IMG/VR virus record: IMGVR_UViG_3300023174_000036 | Span: 292,313 to 356,312 of that record | Length of the DNA stretch: 64,000 bases | Strand: one strand, 5' to 3' | Shown: positions 6,320 through 39,684 of the stretch, in pieces | Layout: each line of letters opens with the position of its first letter | Numbering within the stretch: the first letter of the stretch is position 1 | The notes under the pieces: model-generated | What the model was told of the DNA's origin: nothing | Seen by the model: the letters and a program-made list of their open reading frames with translations, nothing else | The model's database searches: none | Position numbers and translations under genes: made by a program

Positions 6320-6646
6320 TTATACTCGAAATGATTCACCGCATCCACAACGATCTCGTTCGTTGGGATTGATGAAATCAAAACCTTCATTGAGTCCATT
6401 GCGAACCCAATCCATTGTCAAGCCATTTAGATAAGCTAGACTTTTGGCATCTATTAATACCACAAAGTCTTTTTGAGCAAAGTTGGTTACACCCACTTCG
6501 GCAGTGTACTCGTCCACGTATTCCATAGTGTAGGCCAATCCACTACAACCAGTGGTTCTTACACCTATACGAATACCAACACCCTTGCCGCGTTTGAGTA
6601 AATTTTGTTTTATTTTTTTAGACGCTGTGTCGGTTACGGTAATCAT
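6320..6646 (-). CDS. iscA: Fe-S cluster A-type carrier IscA
   Basis: GCSGLAY and CGCGESF motifs. Confidence 0.93.
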   Translation of the reverse strand: MITVTDTASKKIKQNLLKRGKGVGIRIGVRTTGCSGLAYTMEYVDEYTAEVGVTNFAQKDFVVLIDAKSLAYLNGLTMDWVRNGLNEGFDFINPNERDRCGCGESFRV

Positions 6647-7001
6647 TTACAGCCGCTTTGATAGCATCTTCTGCTAGAATAGAACAATGTATTTTAACTG
6701 GAGGCAATGCTAGTTCTTCTGCAATTTGACTGTTCTTGAGATTAATAGCATCATTGATGTGCATACCTTTGACCCACTCCGTAACCAAACTTGAACTGGC
6801 AATTGCTGAACCACAGCCGTATGTTTTGAATTTGGCATCAGTAATGATGCCATCTTCGTCTACTTTTATCTGTAGTTTCATTACATCGCCACATGCCGGA
6901 GCACCAACCATGCCAGTACCCACGGTGGGATCATCTTTTTCAAATGATCCCACATTGCGTGGATTTTCGTAGTGGTCGATTACTTTTTCTGAATATGCCA
7001 T
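6618..7001 (-). CDS. iscU: Fe-S cluster scaffold IscU
   Basis: MAYSEKVIDHYENPRNVG, GAPACGDVM, GCGSAIASSS, LPPVKIHCS. Confidence 0.96.
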   Translation of the reverse strand: MAYSEKVIDHYENPRNVGSFEKDDPTVGTGMVGAPACGDVMKLQIKVDEDGIITDAKFKTYGCGSAIASSSLVTEWVKGMHINDAINLKNSQIAEELALPPVKIHCSILAEDAIKAAVNDYRNRHSV

Positions 7002-7795: not shown

Positions 7796-8101
7796 TTAAT
7801 TGGCAATAACGTTTGGAGAACCGGCAGTAATGGCACCGGCATCGGTAGAATCGCCCACCCGAGCAACACCAATACCGCCAACAAACACATTACCCGAACC
7901 AGCATTGATAGCCGCGCCATGTGGTACACAATTCCTTCCACTTTTGATTGTGTGAGCGGCTGTGGGGTTACCAATGCATTCAACAGCAATACCATTTGCA
8001 AACACTTTGGCGCCAGCGCCAGTAGGACCAGTCACAGTTGTTGTACCGTCACAACCGTGACCTGTGGTAGTTGGATCTCCGTCTCTGGCTATTGCTGGCA
8101 T
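7796..8101 (-). CDS. PAAR-repeat baseplate spike tip protein
   Basis: MPAIARDGD..TGHGC, GSGNVFVGGIGVARVGD, GSPNV. Confidence 0.9.
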   Translation of the reverse strand: MPAIARDGDPTTTGHGCDGTTTVTGPTGAGAKVFANGIAVECIGNPTAAHTIKSGRNCVPHGAAINAGSGNVFVGGIGVARVGDSTDAGAITAGSPNVIAN

Positions 8102-30822: not shown

Positions 30823-32598
30823 TTATGGTAGGCTTGAGATCTGTTTGACGGTGATAACACCTATCATGCCACCATGTAATTGGCAGAGATATCCGTAAGC
30901 ACCTGAGATGTTCTGTGGTATCTGCCAGTACAATGTTCCTGAAGTTTTGCCTTGAGCATTAGTTCCAGTACTCACAGTGCCGTCAGTGGCCACGTGAATC
31001 AAGCCAGTGTCATAATTGGCTCCGCTGAATCTAATCAAGAACGGATGACCACTCACGTTGAGATTGAACGCAATGGTAGTTCCGCTGATAGCATACAAGG
31101 TAGGATTATTACCCGAGTACTGATTGTTGAACAAGTATGCAGTGGAACCACTGTTGGTCACATCCAAACGTGTGATAGCTGGAATTACGCTGGAGGCCGC
31201 TACAGGAGTGAAACCCAATGCAGTGGTAACGGCACTGGAGTTGATGCCAGTTATGTATCCAGCACCATTTGTCAATTGATTGTTATTGGTGGGTATTGCT
31301 GATGTGAGCGCATAACCTGTCAGTGCTGAACTTGTTATGTAACTGTTTGGGTTGGCATTGCTGTAAGGAGTGAAACCCAATGCAGTGGTAACAGCACTGG
31401 AGTTGATGCCAGTTATGTATCCAGCACCATTTGTCAATTGATTGTTATTGGTGGGTATTGCTGATGTGAGCGCATAGCCCGTTAATGCTGAACTTGTTAT
31501 GTAACTGTTTGGGTTGGCATTGCTGTAAGGTGTGAATCCCAATGCAGTGGTAACCTGAGTGCTGGTCAAAGTATTTGCACTGATGCTGGTCACTGTGGCT
31601 GCATTGCCTGACACACTGCCAGTAATGGTATTGGTCACTGTGAGATTAGTCAATGTACCCACACTGGTCAAACTGCTGGACACCACATTCGCGGCCAGTA
31701 CTGTACCAGTCAGTGTGCCGGCCGCGGCAATTCCTCCGGCAGCAATTTGTTGCCAAACTGTGCCACTGTACAACACAAAATCACCTGCAGAAAATGTTAT
31801 ATTACCAGCTCCAAAATTCACTGTGCCGCCCACGCTCACAGCATATTGAAATCCAGCTGTGCCTGTACCGTTGACCAAAGTAGGAGAGTTAGTGCTGGCA
31901 TTCCACGTGCCTTTGTACACAACAGCGCCAGCACCTGTGGCTGCAATTACGCCTGAACCATTTATTGTGATAGTTGACCCATCCACTTTTACACCGCCCA
32001 ACACACTGGTAGTAGCAGTAGGTAATGTGTAAGTGGTGTAGTTTGCCACCAATTGATTACTGCCATTCAATGTTATAGTACTACCATCTATTTTGACACC
32101 ACCCAGCACTGACGTACTTGCAGTGGGTAATGTGTAAGTGGTGTAGTTTGCCACCAATTGATTACTGCCATTCAATGTTATAGTACTACCATCTATTTTG
32201 ACACCACCCAGCACTGATGTACTTGCAGTGGGCAATGAATAGTTAATATAGTTTGCCACCAATTGATTATTGCCATTCAATGTTATAGTGCTACCATCTA
32301 TTTTGACACCACCCAGCACTGATGTGCTAGCAGTGGGCAAGGTATAATTTGAACCGCCGCCTGAAGATACTAACTGCCCGCTACCGTTGATTGTAATGGT
32401 ACTGCCATCAATCTTAACTCCGCCCAACACTGAAGTTGAAGCCGCTGGCAGTGTGTATGATGTAATTTTATTGTTTACATACGTGGCCAATGCGCTTGCA
32501 GACACAGTCTTGTTGGCTCCACTATCTAAAACTGGAATTCTTGTTGCATCTACTGGATTAGCCAGTACAGGTAGTTGTGATATCTTTATATTTGCCAT
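30823..32598 (-). CDS. virion fibre with tandem repeats and C-terminal cupredoxin-like domain
   Basis: MANIKISQLP; about 5 copies of YTLPTASTSVLGGVKIDGSTIT; two 54-aa repeats; GHPF...YLCQLHGGM. Confidence 0.78.
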   Translation of the reverse strand: MANIKISQLPVLANPVDATRIPVLDSGANKTVSASALATYVNNKITSYTLPAASTSVLGGVKIDGSTITINGSGQLVSSGGGSNYTLPTASTSVLGGVKIDGSTITLNGNNQLVANYINYSLPTASTSVLGGVKIDGSTITLNGSNQLVANYTTYTLPTASTSVLGGVKIDGSTITLNGSNQLVANYTTYTLPTATTSVLGGVKVDGSTITINGSGVIAATGAGAVVYKGTWNASTNSPTLVNGTGTAGFQYAVSVGGTVNFGAGNITFSAGDFVLYSGTVWQQIAAGGIAAAGTLTGTVLAANVVSSSLTSVGTLTNLTVTNTITGSVSGNAATVTSISANTLTSTQVTTALGFTPYSNANPNSYITSSALTGYALTSAIPTNNNQLTNGAGYITGINSSAVTTALGFTPYSNANPNSYITSSALTGYALTSAIPTNNNQLTNGAGYITGINSSAVTTALGFTPVAASSVIPAITRLDVTNSGSTAYLFNNQYSGNNPTLYAISGTTIAFNLNVSGHPFLIRFSGANYDTGLIHVATDGTVSTGTNAQGKTSGTLYWQIPQNISGAYGYLCQLHGGMIGVITVKQISSLP

Positions 32599-32638
32599 TA
32601 TATTGTCCCCTACCAATATTTAGCTTAAATAGCTTACT

Positions 32639-33838
32639 ATGATTAATCACAAACCCTTTGAAGATCTAATACAAAACCTAAAAGATTCAGGAAAATATCG
32701 TGTTTTTAACGATATCGTACGTGAAAACGGCAAGTTTCCTAATGCCATTTGGTACGGACCATACAACATCAAAAACATAGTGAACTGGTGCTCAAACGAT
32801 TATTTGGGTATGGGCCAGCACAAAGTGGTGCTGGATGCCATGCACACAGCACTGGACCATACTGGTTCGGGTTCTGGCGGTACTCGCAACATTGGCGGTA
32901 CCAGTCACTATCACGTGGCTCTGGAGCATGAGTTGGCAACGCTACACAAGAAAGAAAAGGCAGTGTTGTTTAGTTCAGCTTATGTGGCCAACGAATGGAC
33001 GCTGATTGCACTGGCTAAGATTATCCCCAACATTGAATACATCAGCGATGCCAATAATCACAACAGTATTATCATAGGTATTAGTCATAGTAAGGCAAAG
33101 AAAGTTGTGTTCAAACACAACGACTTAGAAGATCTAGAACAGAAACTCAAGATTAGTTTTGCACAAGGCAATACACCTTGCGTGGTATTTGAATCAGTTT
33201 ACAGCATGGATGGCGATGTGGGACACATCAAAGAAATATGTAGATTAGCTGAAAAGTACAAAGCTATAACATACATTGATGAAGTTCATGCTGTGGGCTT
33301 GTATGGTGCAACCGGTGGTGGCAAAGTAGAAGAGCTTGGACTTGAAAACAAAATTGACATAGTCAATGGTACCTTGGGAAAGGCCTACGGAGTTCAAGGC
33401 GGTTACATTGCCTGTGACCGGATTGTGGCTGATGCTATTCGCAGTGTGGCCGCCGGCTTTATCTTTACAACGTCAATGAGTCCAGTAACATGTGCTGGTG
33501 CAATGGGCGCAATCAAATATTTAAAAGCACATCCTGAGATCCGCGAGCGTCATCAAGAACGTGCCGCCACATTAAAACGCAGATTAAAAGAAGCATGTAT
33601 TCCTGTCATGGAGTCAAGTACTAGTCATATTGTGCCAGTATTTGTTGGCGATGCTAAACGTGCTAAAGCCATGAGCGATGCACTGTTAAATGACTATAAC
33701 ATTTATGTACAGGCTATCAACTATCCCACAGTTGATGTGGGAACGGAGCGGTTGCGATTTGCACCTACTCCGTTTCATGATGATGGAATGATTGAAGACT
33801 TAGTTGAAGCATTAACTAAGTTATTTAATACAAACTGA
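32639..33838 (+). CDS. hemA: 5-aminolevulinate synthase (PLP-dependent, Shemin pathway)
   Basis: [69 protein letters not shown]. Confidence 0.93.
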
Positions 33839-34055
33839 TCAGTTGTGTAACACCAAACACTAGAGCCGCGGTAGCTTGTTGATCTGCGGCGCCTTCTTCT
33901 AATTTCTCTGTACTGATCAAATCTTGTAAGATTTCTTTGGCTTCGCTTGGACTCAGTTGTCCAGCACCCACAGCTTCATGTACTTGTAATGCATATTGGG
34001 CACGTTCTGCGGCCCACGGATGACCACTATTCATTAGTTCTGCTAGTACGCTCAT
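33825..34055 (-). CDS. hypothetical protein
   Basis: TAATG-coupled to the upstream lipoprotein. Confidence 0.65.
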
Positions 34056-38140: not shown

Positions 38141-38575
38141 TTAAAAACTGTTATTGAACCAGCCTATCTTACGGCCTTCTGCAATACGCTTGTCATGTTC
38201 TTCTACACTGCCTGGAAAACGCCATGCCCATACAGCTACCAACAACATGAATATGCCTGTGTAGACTACACCTTTAACTGGCACAGTAAAGCTCATGATA
38301 ATCAAACTAGTGCTCATCATGGCCAGCATAAAATATTTCATCTTTGTAGGGAACACACGTTTTTCTCCCCAGTTGGTTAGAAACGGGCCAAAGATCTTGT
38401 GGTTATACAACCAGGCATGCATTTTAGGCGATCCTTTGGCAAAGCAATAGGCCGCAAATACTACAAAGCAACTGTAAGGTATGCCTGGTGTGATTAACCC
38501 CACATAGGCCATGCCTAGGCTTAAAAAGCCTAGGACTTTCCATAAAAATTGTTTTACTTTAGATATTGTAACCAT
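38141..38575 (-). CDS. YbaN/DUF454 family inner-membrane protein
   Basis: GFLSLGMAYVGLITPGIP..F...AAYCFAKGSPKMHAWL..HKIFGP. Confidence 0.85.
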   Translation of the reverse strand: MVTISKVKQFLWKVLGFLSLGMAYVGLITPGIPYSCFVVFAAYCFAKGSPKMHAWLYNHKIFGPFLTNWGEKRVFPTKMKYFMLAMMSTSLIIMSFTVPVKGVVYTGIFMLLVAVWAWRFPGSVEEHDKRIAEGRKIGWFNNSF

Positions 38576-39066
38576 TCGGTATGCCTTACGTTGAACTCTT
38601 GCTTCTTGCGCTTATTTACAAGATTGTAGTAGTCTGGCTTGTAAGGTTTGACTCTTGGCTTGATACCCAGTTTGTCGCTCTTGTGGCTGTTGCATGGTCC
38701 ACAGGCAGTTACACAGTTATCCCATGTGGTCTTACCGCCTTTAGATACTGGCAACACATGATCTAATGTAGCAACTTTGCGTTCTATTTCGCAACCGCAA
38801 TACTGGCATTGTCCATCGTCACGCAGGTATACATTGGATCTACTAAATCTAACTGTAGTTTTGATTTTCATGTAGTCGCGCAGAATGATTACGCTGGGCA
38901 CTGGTGTTTCCCAACGTGCTGAACGTACTACCCAATTGTCGTGCCAATGCAATACAACAGCCTTATCCAAGACCATGTATTTGATTGACTCTTGCCAATT
39001 GATTGTGCTTAACGGTAGTACACTAACTGGTAAACCGTCAGCGTTGAGAACTAAACAGTCTGACAT
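38554..39066 (-). CDS. HNH endonuclease
   Basis: LVLNAD, RDDGQCQYCG, TLDHVLPVSKGG...NCVTACGPCN. Confidence 0.92.
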   Translation of the reverse strand: MSDCLVLNADGLPVSVLPLSTINWQESIKYMVLDKAVVLHWHDNWVVRSARWETPVPSVIILRDYMKIKTTVRFSRSNVYLRDDGQCQYCGCEIERKVATLDHVLPVSKGGKTTWDNCVTACGPCNSHKSDKLGIKPRVKPYKPDYYNLVNKRKKQEFNVRHTEWLQYLK

Positions 39067-39135: not shown

Positions 39136-39684
39136 TTACAATAATATGTTTTGGGCAAATTCTAAACCGCTTTGGTCCAATGCACTGCACCATTGTTCTT
39201 GTTGATCGCTACCAAAAATTAAATTTAAATTTGATTTGGTCAAACACCAACTATTTTCTTTGGTCCACGGTGCTTTGCCTTCGATTTCACTGTCCAACTG
39301 TCCCACAGCCCATCCGCACATACCAAGGAATATTCTATAGTATTCGGGCCTGTCCCCTGATGCTAGTCTGTGTATCATATCACCAGTACTGCTAAGTGAT
39401 AGTTCATTGGATATGCGCAATGTATTTGAAGTACGCCATTCGCTTGAATGAAGCATGGTTAGGCTCTGACTGTTTACTGGGCCACCTACATAGATATAAC
39501 CGGGCAAATCTATGTCACAGTTCATCTGCTGGCCAAACTCAACAATACTCAGAGTGCTACGTTTGTTTAGTACAAACCCTACACTGCCTGCGGCGTGATG
39601 TTCAGTGACAGCAATTACAGTTTTATGCCAGAAATTGTTTTTTACTGCGGGTGGGGCGATTAATAAGGTACCTGCTAGATTCAT
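39136..39684 (-). CDS. YqgE/AlgH family protein
   Basis: GTLLIA, GFVLNK, GGPV, FLGMCGWAVGQLDSEI. Confidence 0.88.
   Translation of the reverse strand: MNLAGTLLIAPPAVKNNFWHKTVIAVTEHHAAGSVGFVLNKRSTLSIVEFGQQMNCDIDLPGYIYVGGPVNSQSLTMLHSSEWRTSNTLRISNELSLSSTGDMIHRLASGDRPEYYRIFLGMCGWAVGQLDSEIEGKAPWTKENSWCLTKSNLNLIFGSDQQEQWCSALDQSGLEFAQNILL

What the first reader, a model, noticed from the sequence alone, without database searches (positions are those of the whole stretch)
32626..33838. Shemin-pathway ALA synthase in a phage with apparent betaproteobacterial affinities
Seen: an intact ALAS inserted on the opposite strand among virion genes with its own TAAATA promoter. Established: ALAS is typical of alphaproteobacteria and mitochondria, while most other bacteria use the tRNA-Glu-dependent C5 route. 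Inference: it gives the host a tRNA-independent heme entry step during infection. IscU/IscA and YbaN (often near heme-uptake genes) point to a wider iron/cofactor programme.
Basis: partly seen in the sequence, partly recalled or inferred. Interest (0 to 1): 0.6.

Follow-up and report, generated by a model that had tools for sequence, protein, structure and literature searches.

The report
Phage-encoded ALA synthase (known valaS type)
A 356-kb freshwater jumbo phage carries an intact gene for 5-aminolevulinate synthase, the one-enzyme entry step to heme synthesis, but this kind of phage gene (valaS) was already described and shown to work in 2024, so the main finding is real but not new.

Summary
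Window 32639..33838 (+) is an intact 399-aa 5-aminolevulinate synthase (TIGR01821, 563 bits against a cutoff of 339; BioF, Kbl and SPT models fall below theirs). All catalytic residues are present. It is the only + strand gene in a long run of − strand genes, in the last 64 kb of a 356-kb freshwater jumbo phage.

It is not novel in kind. Wegner et al. 2024 (Nat Commun 15:8783) described viral alaS, showed that one complements an E. coli ALA auxotroph, and proposed the same tRNA-Glu-sparing idea.

This phage fits their picture:
- The heme-feedback residues are missing.
- hemO and a bilin reductase sit side by side 34.8 kb upstream, just outside the window.

The betaproteobacterial affinity has support (beta-type two-piece tmRNA; IscU closest to Burkholderiales) but is unproven. 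The nearest cultured relatives by DNA polymerase infect Rhizobiales.

Additions from this work:
- A DUF454/YbaN gene is linked to ALAS in 64 of 87 phage loci and in 0 of 45 cellular loci.
- Phage-type ALAS is nested in chromosomes of reduced Neisseriaceae-like genomes that show no glutamyl-tRNA reductase.
- The TAAATA box is a genome-wide promoter-like motif.

The parts
32639..33838 (+). 5-aminolevulinate synthase (viral alaS), 399 aa, intact
   Evidence: TIGR01821 563.4 bits against cutoff 338.55, with sibling models below their cutoffs. Best solved relatives are bacterial ALAS 7x98 and 2bwn at E 1e-124 to 1e-126. PLP lysine K248 and 11 other catalytic or substrate positions are invariant.
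32613..32638 (+). Conserved upstream element CCAATATTTAGC-TTAAATA-N4-ACT directly before the ATG; the TTAAATA box is 32625-32631
   Evidence: Conserved in most of 19 related phage loci even where the sequence further upstream is unrelated (alignment A1). TAAATA is 14-fold enriched upstream of the 411 gene starts. 79 of the 272 genomic copies lie within 45 nt of a start. Promoter function is inferred, not shown.
30823..32616 (-). Divergently oriented tail-fibre-like gene; only 22-40 bp separate its start from the ALAS start
   Evidence: Pfam Phage_head_fibr, PHROG tail and baseplate-connector families; sequence.
33825..34055 (-). Small convergent ORF (76 aa) overlapping the ALAS 3' end by 14 nt; retained in 62 of 80 close relatives
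38141..38575 (-). DUF454/YbaN-family inner-membrane protein, the gene most persistently linked to viral ALAS
   Evidence: PF04304 93.9 bits. A homolog lies 7 bp to 5.9 kb downstream of ALAS in 57-58 of 80 close viral loci, and directly downstream on the same strand in 7 of 7 divergent phage loci. It is found in 0 of 45 cellular ALAS loci.
6618..7001 (-). IscU Fe-S scaffold
   Evidence: PF01592 181 bits. 79-84% identical to IscU of sampled Burkholiales-order genomes (Burkholderiales), at most 77% to sampled Alphaproteobacteria.
6320..6646 (-). IscA-type Fe-S carrier, directly downstream of IscU
   Evidence: PF01521 57-58 bits

Best explanation
The gene is a functional viral 5-aminolevulinate synthase (valaS), an auxiliary metabolic gene of a freshwater T4-related jumbo myophage. 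During infection the PLP-dependent homodimer would condense glycine with succinyl-CoA to make 5-ALA in one step. Because it lacks the heme-sensing residues of the regulated bacterial enzyme, it would do so without feedback control. The host's own downstream enzymes then turn ALA into heme and other tetrapyrroles, since the phage has no ALAD or ferrochelatase. The phage's adjacent heme oxygenase and bilin reductase, its IscU/IscA genes and the linked DUF454 membrane protein belong to the same iron/tetrapyrrole programme. If the host uses the C5 route, as the beta-type signals suggest, the enzyme also uncouples ALA supply from Glu-tRNA. The gene seems to travel as a small unit with its own conserved upstream box (TTAAATA, a variant of a T4-late-like (G/T)ATAAATA motif used throughout the genome). 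That box sits so close to the ATG that the mRNA would be leaderless or nearly so. Shown here: enzyme family, intact active site, phage context, gene complement, motif conservation. Shown elsewhere for a homolog: activity. Inferred: role in infection, host, promoter function.
For: Family assignment and exclusion of BioF, Kbl and SPT. About 53% identity-level match to solved bacterial ALAS, with R21, N54, T83, N85, H142, E185, S189, D214, H217, T245, K248 and R374 (R. capsulatus numbering) all conserved. These positions are invariant in 91 phage-type sequences. The His342 position is R/K/L/V and never His, and a C-terminal Cys is present in only 1 of 80, as reported for vAlaS. Phage context: 356-kb virus record, tail-fibre, PAAR and lysin genes, T4-family DNA polymerase, 29 tRNAs. 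492 IMG/VR stretches encode relatives. The phage-type clade has 100/100 support. hemO and FDBR are adjacent in the same genome. No ALAD or ferrochelatase. [quoted passage not shown] A metatranscriptome contig with no mismatches lies inside the gene. Three reduced Neisseriaceae-like genomes carry a phage-type ALAS and show no GluTR, so this enzyme type can apparently serve as the sole ALA source in a non-alphaproteobacterium.
Against: No activity, expression timing or phenotype is known for this protein. The RNA-library contig could be DNA carry-over. The host is unknown, so the tRNA-Glu-sparing benefit is conjecture. The phage also brings two tRNA-Glu(UUC) genes of its own, which weakens the idea that Glu-tRNA is limiting. 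The heme-feedback residues are also absent from most of the alphaproteobacterial ALAS sampled here (His in 6 of 39), so their absence is weak evidence of deregulation. Genes carrying the TAAATA box have mixed functions, so no temporal class can be assigned.
Confidence: 0.78

Rival explanations
1. The host is an alphaproteobacterium that already uses the Shemin route. The phage copy then simply supplements or replaces the host's tightly regulated ALAS with an unregulated one, and no tRNA-Glu bypass is involved.
For: The ALAS clade is nested within alphaproteobacterial ALAS. The nearest cultured phages by DNA polymerase are Sinorhizobium phage Phosso (49%) and Agrobacterium phage Atu_ph07 (46%). 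Wegner et al. place many valaS contigs with pelagimyophages, and CB_2 with Methylocystis. Phage tmRNA type can mismatch the host.
Against: The phage tmRNA is the betaproteobacterial two-piece type (RF01850, 126 bits against 84), whereas an alphaproteobacterial genome scores only 58 bits on that model. IscU is closer to Burkholderiales (up to 84%, found in 200 of 301 genomes) than to Alphaproteobacteria (at most 77%, 39 of 151). Phage-type ALAS has entered Neisseriaceae chromosomes. The polymerase identities of 46-49% are too low to transfer a host.
Confidence: 0.25
2. ALA made by the phage enzyme is mainly feedstock for the phage's own heme oxygenase and bilin reductase (bilin production or iron cycling), not for sustaining respiration.
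For: hemO and an FDBR are adjacent in the same genome. Three-gene or 'broken' cassettes are a recurrent pattern. Fe-S assembly genes IscU and IscA are also present.
Against: hemO/FDBR lie 34.8 kb from ALAS and are not within 6 kb of ALAS in any of the 87 related phage loci, so there is no tight linkage. The purpose of bilins in non-phototrophs is unknown.
Confidence: 0.2
3. The enzyme is an alpha-oxoamine synthase with a different substrate pair (Kbl-, BioF-, SPT- or CqsA-like), mislabelled as ALAS.
For: All these enzymes share the fold and Pfam domain PF00155. Sibling models give E-values of 1e-94 and weaker.
Against: Only the ALAS equivalog passes its curated cutoff, by 225 bits, and all siblings fail theirs. 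Residues that contact glycine and succinyl-CoA in R. capsulatus ALAS are all conserved. A vAlaS homolog has the canonical activity.
Confidence: 0.03
4. The gene is host DNA captured by mis-assembly or mis-binning and is not part of the phage.
For: Many 'cellular' ALAS hits at 63-71% sit in MAGs.
Against: Those MAG contigs share several other phage genes with this genome, so they are the mis-binned ones. ALAS sits in conserved synteny in 80 IMG/VR contigs. Assemblies from independent studies cover the junctions on both sides without mismatch. GC content (0.42) is close to the genome's (0.40).
Confidence: 0.02

Closest known systems
Viral AlaS (valaS) of freshwater phage CB_2 and of marine and freshwater metagenomic phages (Wegner et al. 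2024, PMC11480375)
   Same: A phage-borne Shemin-pathway ALAS with all catalytic residues kept and the heme-feedback His/Cys missing. It clusters apart from bacterial ALAS and co-occurs with hemO and a bilin reductase ('broken cassette'). It comes from a freshwater habitat. The same proposed benefit: unregulated ALA supply and sparing of Glu-tRNA.
   Different: A different phage lineage: an Atu_ph07/121Q-related jumbo myophage with beta-type tmRNA, rather than a pelagimyophage-like phage or the Methylocystis phage CB_2. The PLP lysine is at 248, not 250. hemO/FDBR lie 34.8 kb away. The DUF454 linkage is not mentioned in that paper. I could not place this sequence in one tree with the published vAlaS sequences, because they were not available by reference.
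Rhodobacter capsulatus AlaS (PDB 2BWN/2BWO/2BWP) and the bacterial ALAS of PDB 7X98
   Same: Same length, fold family and active-site residues; E about 1e-125.
   Different: The regulatory His342 is Arg here, and the C-terminal tail is shorter and has no Cys400 equivalent. The gene is encoded by a virus.
ALAS listed among porphyrin-metabolism genes of large freshwater phages (Chen et al. 2020, bioRxiv 10.1101/2020.02.13.942896)
   Same: Large (159-527 kb) freshwater phages carrying ALAS together with ho1 and a pcyX-like gene.
   Different: No pmoC was found here, although that search's control matched nowhere and so is uninformative. The relationship of this genome to those phages was not tested.
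Horizontally acquired heme gene ('ALA5') of Neisseriaceae louse symbionts and the fur-associated OTU 5 (PMC11436785)
   Same: These ALAS sequences are 60-69% identical to the window's and fall inside the phage-type clade (100/98).
   Different: They are chromosomal, flanked by LptD, patatin, TolC-like and ABC-2 genes. They have no DUF454 neighbour, and their genomes show no GluTR. The paper flags the gene as putative HGT but, in the passages I read, names no phage source.

Membership tests
5-aminolevulinate synthase, EC 2.3.1.37 (NCBIfam TIGR01821 equivalog) | Full-length score above the curated equivalog cutoff | tested here: met
   563.4 bits against cutoff 338.55, covering residues 6-397 of 399; the same result in a six-frame genome search.
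5-aminolevulinate synthase, EC 2.3.1.37 (NCBIfam TIGR01821 equivalog) | PLP Schiff-base lysine and PLP-contact residues (R. capsulatus K248, H142, S189, D214, H217, T245) | tested here: met
   All are present at the aligned positions K248, H141, S189, D214, H217, T245 and invariant in 91 phage-type sequences. The list of roles is from my memory of the 2BWN structure paper.
5-aminolevulinate synthase, EC 2.3.1.37 (NCBIfam TIGR01821 equivalog) | Residues contacting glycine and succinyl-CoA (R. capsulatus R374; R21, N54, T83, N85) | tested here: met
   R373, R21, N53, T82 and N84 are conserved.
5-aminolevulinate synthase, EC 2.3.1.37 (NCBIfam TIGR01821 equivalog) | Catalyses glycine + succinyl-CoA -> 5-ALA + CoA + CO2 | not testable with these tools
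   Shown only for the homologous CB_2 vAlaS (PMC11480375).
Viral AlaS (valaS auxiliary metabolic gene, Wegner et al. 2024) | Encoded in a bacteriophage genome | tested here: met
   356-kb virus record; tail-fibre, PAAR, lysin and virion-protein PHROGs; T4-family DNA polymerase nearest to jumbo myophages.
Viral AlaS (valaS auxiliary metabolic gene, Wegner et al. 2024) | Clusters separately from bacterial AlaS | tested here: met
   The phage-type clade has 100/100 support within alphaproteobacterial diversity. The only cellular members are three reduced Neisseriaceae-like genomes.
Viral AlaS (valaS auxiliary metabolic gene, Wegner et al. 2024) | Same clade as the published vAlaS sequences (CB_2, marine contigs) | not tested
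Viral AlaS (valaS auxiliary metabolic gene, Wegner et al. 2024) | Lacks one or both heme-feedback residues (His342, Cys400) | tested here: met
   Arg341 stands at the His342 position, and the tail ends LFNTN with no Cys.
Viral AlaS (valaS auxiliary metabolic gene, Wegner et al. 2024) | Frequent co-occurrence with hemO and pcyA/X | tested here: met
   Heme_oxygenase (72.5 bits) and Fe_bilin_red (71.2 bits) are adjacent at G000 289444-290686, which is 34.8 kb upstream of ALAS and 1.6 kb before the window.
BioF / Kbl / serine palmitoyltransferase / CqsA (other alpha-oxoamine synthases) | Score above the family's curated cutoff | tested here: not met
   BioF 316 against 426; Kbl 315 against 460 and 261 against 493; SPT 205-232 against 500-670; CqsA-type 159 against 428.
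T4-type late promoter (TATAAATA box) | Octamer TATAAATA about 6-7 nt upstream of the transcription start, used by many late genes | tested here: inconclusive
   Genome-wide (G/T)ATAAATA motif: 79 of 272 copies lie within 45 nt upstream of starts, and it is 14-fold enriched there. ALAS has the TTAAATA variant, conserved in its orthologs. There are no transcription-start data, the genes carrying the box have mixed functions, and a gp55 homolog was not searched for.

The most novel reading that the evidence does not exclude
ALAS and the DUF454/YbaN membrane protein form a phage-specific two-gene module. The pairing has survived deep divergence, an inversion and repeated gene insertions between the two genes, yet it is absent next to cellular ALAS. 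DUF454 would then act on the product side of ALAS, for example by handling ALA or porphyrin traffic or toxicity at the inner membrane. That would give the first functional handle on a widespread protein family of unknown function that the literature already ties loosely to iron starvation and heme-oxygenase loci.
Probability: 0.25. Interest if true: 0.55.

Novelty: new member of a known kind. Interest (0 to 1): 0.3.

Why it matters
The core finding adds one more well-documented case, in a different jumbo-phage lineage, to the published picture that aquatic phages carry the Shemin enzyme to control tetrapyrrole supply in infected cells. It does not change that picture. Three side results could be worth a specialist's time:
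1. DUF454/YbaN is the gene most persistently linked to viral ALAS, which gives a testable hypothesis for a family of unknown function.
2. Phage-type ALAS sits in chromosomes of reduced Neisseriaceae-like bacteria that show no glutamyl-tRNA reductase. This is a natural demonstration that the enzyme can replace the C5 route outside the Alphaproteobacteria, and it points to phages as the vehicle of that transfer.
3. Several species-representative MAGs from unrelated phyla contain mis-binned contigs of this phage group, one of them 335 kb long.

Tried and rejected
- **Phage DNA search:** a search of 7.9 kb of the window against 50,697 phage records found nothing. An earlier call was one base over the size limit.
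- **ALAS against phage records:** tblastn gave only Kbl/BioF-like hits of at most 35% identity; the annotated ones lie in host-derived or transduced DNA, and most of the others are unannotated records. No PHROG family matches ALAS. So cultured-phage databases do not show this gene, although IMG/VR and the literature do.
- **TAAATA as a private ALAS promoter:** rejected. TAAATA-N4-8-ATG occurs as often as in shuffles (43 against 43.2), and the signal is a genome-wide box upstream of many genes.
- **Expression timing from box-bearing genes:** their functions are mixed, so no conclusion.
- **Naming the host from the tmRNA:** Polynucleobacter, two Neisseriaceae, a Francisella MAG and Terasakiella do not carry it. 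Sharkady & Williams 2004 is not held.
- **Host from the mis-binned MAG labels:** rejected, because the labels span five phyla.
- **pmoC search:** uninformative, because the control matched nowhere.
- **Two genome-search runs** failed on a parameter slip.
- **Not run, on purpose:** the large representative-protein search (the protein was not left open; operators' cost note), structure prediction (about 53% identity to solved ALAS, and a published vAlaS model exists), and complex prediction (I make no binding claim).

Full report
**1. Observation**

Window 32639..33838 (+) is an uninterrupted 399-codon ORF. Every other credible gene between about 24.6 and 46.9 kb is on the − strand.

The divergent upstream neighbour (30823..32616) and three genes before it are tail-fibre-like. 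The downstream genes are small unknowns, a PNK/HAD-like protein, a DUF6321 protein and a nuclease. So 'among virion genes' holds on one side only.

The window is the last 64 kb of a 356,312-bp IMG/VR virus record estimated 96% complete. That record has 40% GC, about 412 ORFs, 29 tRNAs and a tmRNA.

**2. What the protein is**

It scores 563.4 bits on the ALAS equivalog TIGR01821 (cutoff 338.55). BioF, Kbl, serine palmitoyltransferase and CqsA-type models all fall well below their cutoffs. The best solved relatives are bacterial ALAS 7x98 and R. capsulatus 2bwn (E 1e-126 and 1e-124), then mitochondrial ALAS, with Kbl and BioF far behind.

In the HMMER alignment to 2bwn, these residues are all conserved: R21, N54, T83, N85, H142, E185, S189, D214, H217, T245, the Schiff-base K248 and R374. 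They are invariant in all 91 phage-type sequences I collected.

The position of the heme-feedback His342 is Arg here and is never His in the phage-type clade. The C-terminal tail is short and has no Cys. A caveat: only 6 of 39 cellular ALAS in my sample have His there, so this is weak evidence of deregulation.

**3. It is already described**

Wegner et al. 2024 (PMC11480375) report viral alaS in marine and freshwater phage contigs. It occurs alone, in a three-gene cassette with hemO and pcyA/X, or as a 'broken' cassette. Their findings:
- The catalytic residues are kept.
- The heme-feedback residues are often lost.
- The K250A mutant is dead.
- Their Fig. 7 hypothesis is that in non-alphaproteobacterial hosts vAlaS frees Glu-tRNA for translation.

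Chen et al. 2020 had already listed ALAS, ho1 and a pcyX-like gene in large freshwater phages.

This explains why the cultured-phage resources are blank (no true ALAS in 50,697 phage records; no PHROG) while metagenomic resources are full. More than 120 protein clusters are at least 87% identical, some on contigs of 264-354 kb, and 492 IMG/VR stretches encode relatives.

**4. Gene complement**

A heme oxygenase (G000 290117-290686) and a ferredoxin-dependent bilin reductase (289444-290136) lie side by side on the − strand. They are 1.6 kb before the window and 34.8 kb from ALAS. This is the 'broken cassette' layout.

IscU, IscA and DUF454/YbaN are confirmed in the window, and a second IscA lies at G000 205583-205885. 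ALAD and ferrochelatase were not found, so the phage supplies only the entry step. The pmoC search is uninformative.

**5. Phylogeny**

I built a careful IQ-TREE (LG+C20+F+G4) of 52 ALAS sequences rooted on Kbl-like proteins. Support values are ultrafast bootstrap / SH-aLRT (the 77-row quick tree agrees):
- All phage-type sequences form one clade (100/100), nested within alphaproteobacterial diversity. It is nearest to the Rhodobacterales and Caulobacterales groups, with weak support.
- True alphaproteobacterial ALAS is 47-57% identical to the window protein.

The 63-71% 'cellular' hits in MAGs labelled Crocinitomicaceae, Neomarinimicrobiota (a 335-kb contig), Vibrio, Polynucleobacter, Flavobacteriales and Rhodobacteraceae share several other genes with this phage. 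They are mis-binned phage contigs.

Three sequences are different: Neisseriaceae PsAf, Neisseriaceae OTU5-Ma and a MAG labelled Francisella.
- They share only ALAS with the phage.
- They sit in one conserved chromosomal neighbourhood: LptD, an APH-family kinase, patatin, ALAS, a TolC-like protein and two ABC-2 permeases.
- They fall inside the phage-type clade, next to the close viral group (100/98).

Their genomes (1.2-1.8 Mb) show no glutamyl-tRNA reductase above cutoff (best 45 bits against a cutoff of 209.6). A Polynucleobacter MAG scores 407 bits and Terasakiella 315 bits. The louse-symbiont paper flags the heme gene 'ALA5' as putative HGT (PMC11436785). My tree suggests that the donor pool was this phage clade. 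The direction is inferred from nesting only.

**6. Host**

For betaproteobacterial affinity:
- The phage tmRNA (G000 278207-278623) is the betaproteobacterial two-piece type (RF01850, 126 bits against a gathering score of 84). An alphaproteobacterium reaches only 58 bits on that model. Only 3 of 151 sampled genomes of the order around Polynucleobacter exceed the threshold.
- IscU is 79-84% identical across that order (200 of 301 genomes hit). It is at most 77% identical in Alphaproteobacteria, where 39 of 151 genomes are hit.
- Shine-Dalgarno AAGGAG is 21-fold enriched upstream of starts, which argues against a Bacteroidota host.
- Phage-type ALAS has entered Neisseriaceae chromosomes.

Against:
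- The DNA polymerase is closest to Sinorhizobium phage Phosso (49%) and Agrobacterium phage Atu_ph07 (46%), then to the 121Q/CBB/GAP32 group at about 43%.
- Melnitz shows that a phage tmRNA can be of another class than its host.

I rate a non-alphaproteobacterial (Burkholderiales sensu GTDB) host as more likely than not, at about 0.6. It is not shown.

**7. Promoter claim**

Across 19 related loci, a 26-nt element (CCAATATTTAGCG-TTAAATA-N4-ACT) directly precedes the ATG, even where sequence further upstream is unrelated. So the gene travels with its own upstream element.

TAAATA is not private to ALAS:
- It is 14-fold enriched in the 28 nt before the 411 gene starts.
- 79 of 272 genomic copies lie within 45 nt upstream of a start, a zone that makes up 2.6% of the sequence space.
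- The extended consensus is (G/T)ATAAATA, close to the T4 late box.
- In 23 genes, ALAS among them, the box begins 6-14 nt (mostly 10-13) before the ATG. That leaves no room for a Shine-Dalgarno site and implies leaderless or near-leaderless mRNAs. This last step is inference.

The simple sigma-70 scan adds nothing specific. Genes carrying the box have mixed functions.

**8. DUF454 linkage (new here)**

- A homolog of the window's YbaN lies 7 bp to 5.9 kb downstream of ALAS, in convergent orientation, in 57-58 of 80 close viral loci. Most loci that lack it have short flanks.
- In all 7 divergent phage loci it lies directly downstream on the same strand.
- In that divergent set it is the only window neighbour kept in 7 of 7 loci; the next best is 4 of 7.
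- A profile search finds no DUF454 within 4 kb of ALAS in 45 cellular loci, nor in 25 Kbl/BioF loci.
- Wegner et al. do not mention it.
- In the literature, DUF454 is induced by iron starvation in Avibacterium, and it co-occurs with heme oxygenase next to T11SS hemophore loci.

This fits a functional tie, but within the close clade it is indistinguishable from plain synteny.

**9. Environment and expression**

The 5-kb stretch is held by lake and freshwater metagenomes from five studies at a word share of at least 0.64. One metatranscriptome has a 242-nt contig with no mismatches inside ALAS (32764-33005) and contigs over the downstream − strand genes, but none over the tail-fibre gene. This is suggestive only, because DNA carry-over cannot be excluded.

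**10. Verdict**

It belongs to a kind published in 2024, including the proposed mechanism. The interest lies in the side observations: the DUF454 linkage, the phage-type ALAS that replaces the C5 route in reduced Neisseriaceae-like genomes, the beta-type host signals, and the leaderless T4-late-like box.

Noticed in passing
G000:C1:289444-290686 (1.6-2.9 kb before window position 1); loci L177, L178: Adjacent heme oxygenase (190 aa) and ferredoxin-dependent bilin reductase (231 aa) on the - strand. Together with ALAS they make the 'broken cassette' of Wegner et al.
   Followed up: yes
window 38141..38575 (-) and loci L003, L005-L009, L012, L082-L161: DUF454/YbaN is linked to viral ALAS in 64 of 87 phage loci: convergent in the close clade, and directly downstream on the same strand in the divergent clade. 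It is found in none of 45 cellular ALAS loci.
   Followed up: yes
L002, L010, L011 (genomes G003, G005, G004): A phage-type ALAS sits in a conserved chromosomal neighbourhood (LptD, APH, patatin, ALAS, TolC-like, ABC-2 x2) of two reduced Neisseriaceae genomes and a MAG labelled Francisella. All three show no glutamyl-tRNA reductase above cutoff. The identical synteny makes the 'Francisella' label doubtful.
   Followed up: partly
G000:C1:264184-278623 (outside the window; locus L175): A cluster of 27 tRNA genes, including two tRNA-Glu(UUC), plus a permuted two-piece tmRNA of the betaproteobacterial type. ARAGORN predicts an unusually long tag that ends ...ANDADFAMAA. A weak sub-threshold cspA-thermoregulator match lies just beside it.
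   Followed up: partly
L003, L005 (335,231-bp contig), L006, L007, L008, L009, L012: Contigs of this phage group are binned into species-representative MAGs labelled Crocinitomicaceae, Neomarinimicrobiota, Vibrio, Polynucleobacter, Flavobacteriales and Rhodobacteraceae. They share ALAS, DUF454 and other phage genes with this genome, so these are contaminated bins.
   Followed up: partly
whole genome; in the window e.g. 8112, 19236, 20112, 25004, 28417, 39695, 43050, 52314, 56054: A (G/T)ATAAATA box begins 6-14 nt (mostly 10-13) before the ATG of 23 genes, with no room for a Shine-Dalgarno site, which suggests a class of leaderless transcripts. 56 further copies sit 17-45 nt upstream of starts.
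   Followed up: partly
window 38554..39066 (-) and 39136..39684 (-): An HNH endonuclease overlaps the start of the DUF454 gene by 22 nt, and an AlgH-like (DUF179) protein follows. Both are retained in most close relatives (58 and 47 of 80).
   Followed up: no
G000:C1:58213-68091, 104339-118807, 195686-205558: Three giant ORFs of 3292, 4822 and 3290 aa. Also a 758-aa ATP-dependent (Lon-like) protease at 172685-174961 that weakly matches a PHROG annotated 'porphyrin biosynthesis' (an AAA/CobS-like region).
   Followed up: no
G000:C1:205583-205885 (locus L180): A second IscA-type gene far from the IscU-IscA pair, so the phage carries three Fe-S assembly genes.
   Followed up: no
genome G002 (Terasakiella pusilla, locus L025): This alphaproteobacterium has both an ALAS and a glutamyl-tRNA reductase above cutoff (315 bits), so both ALA routes are present in one genome.
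   Followed up: no
window 7796..8101 (-): A PAAR-motif protein (phrog_281) preceded by a TAAATA box, a few hundred bases from the IscU-IscA pair.
   Followed up: no
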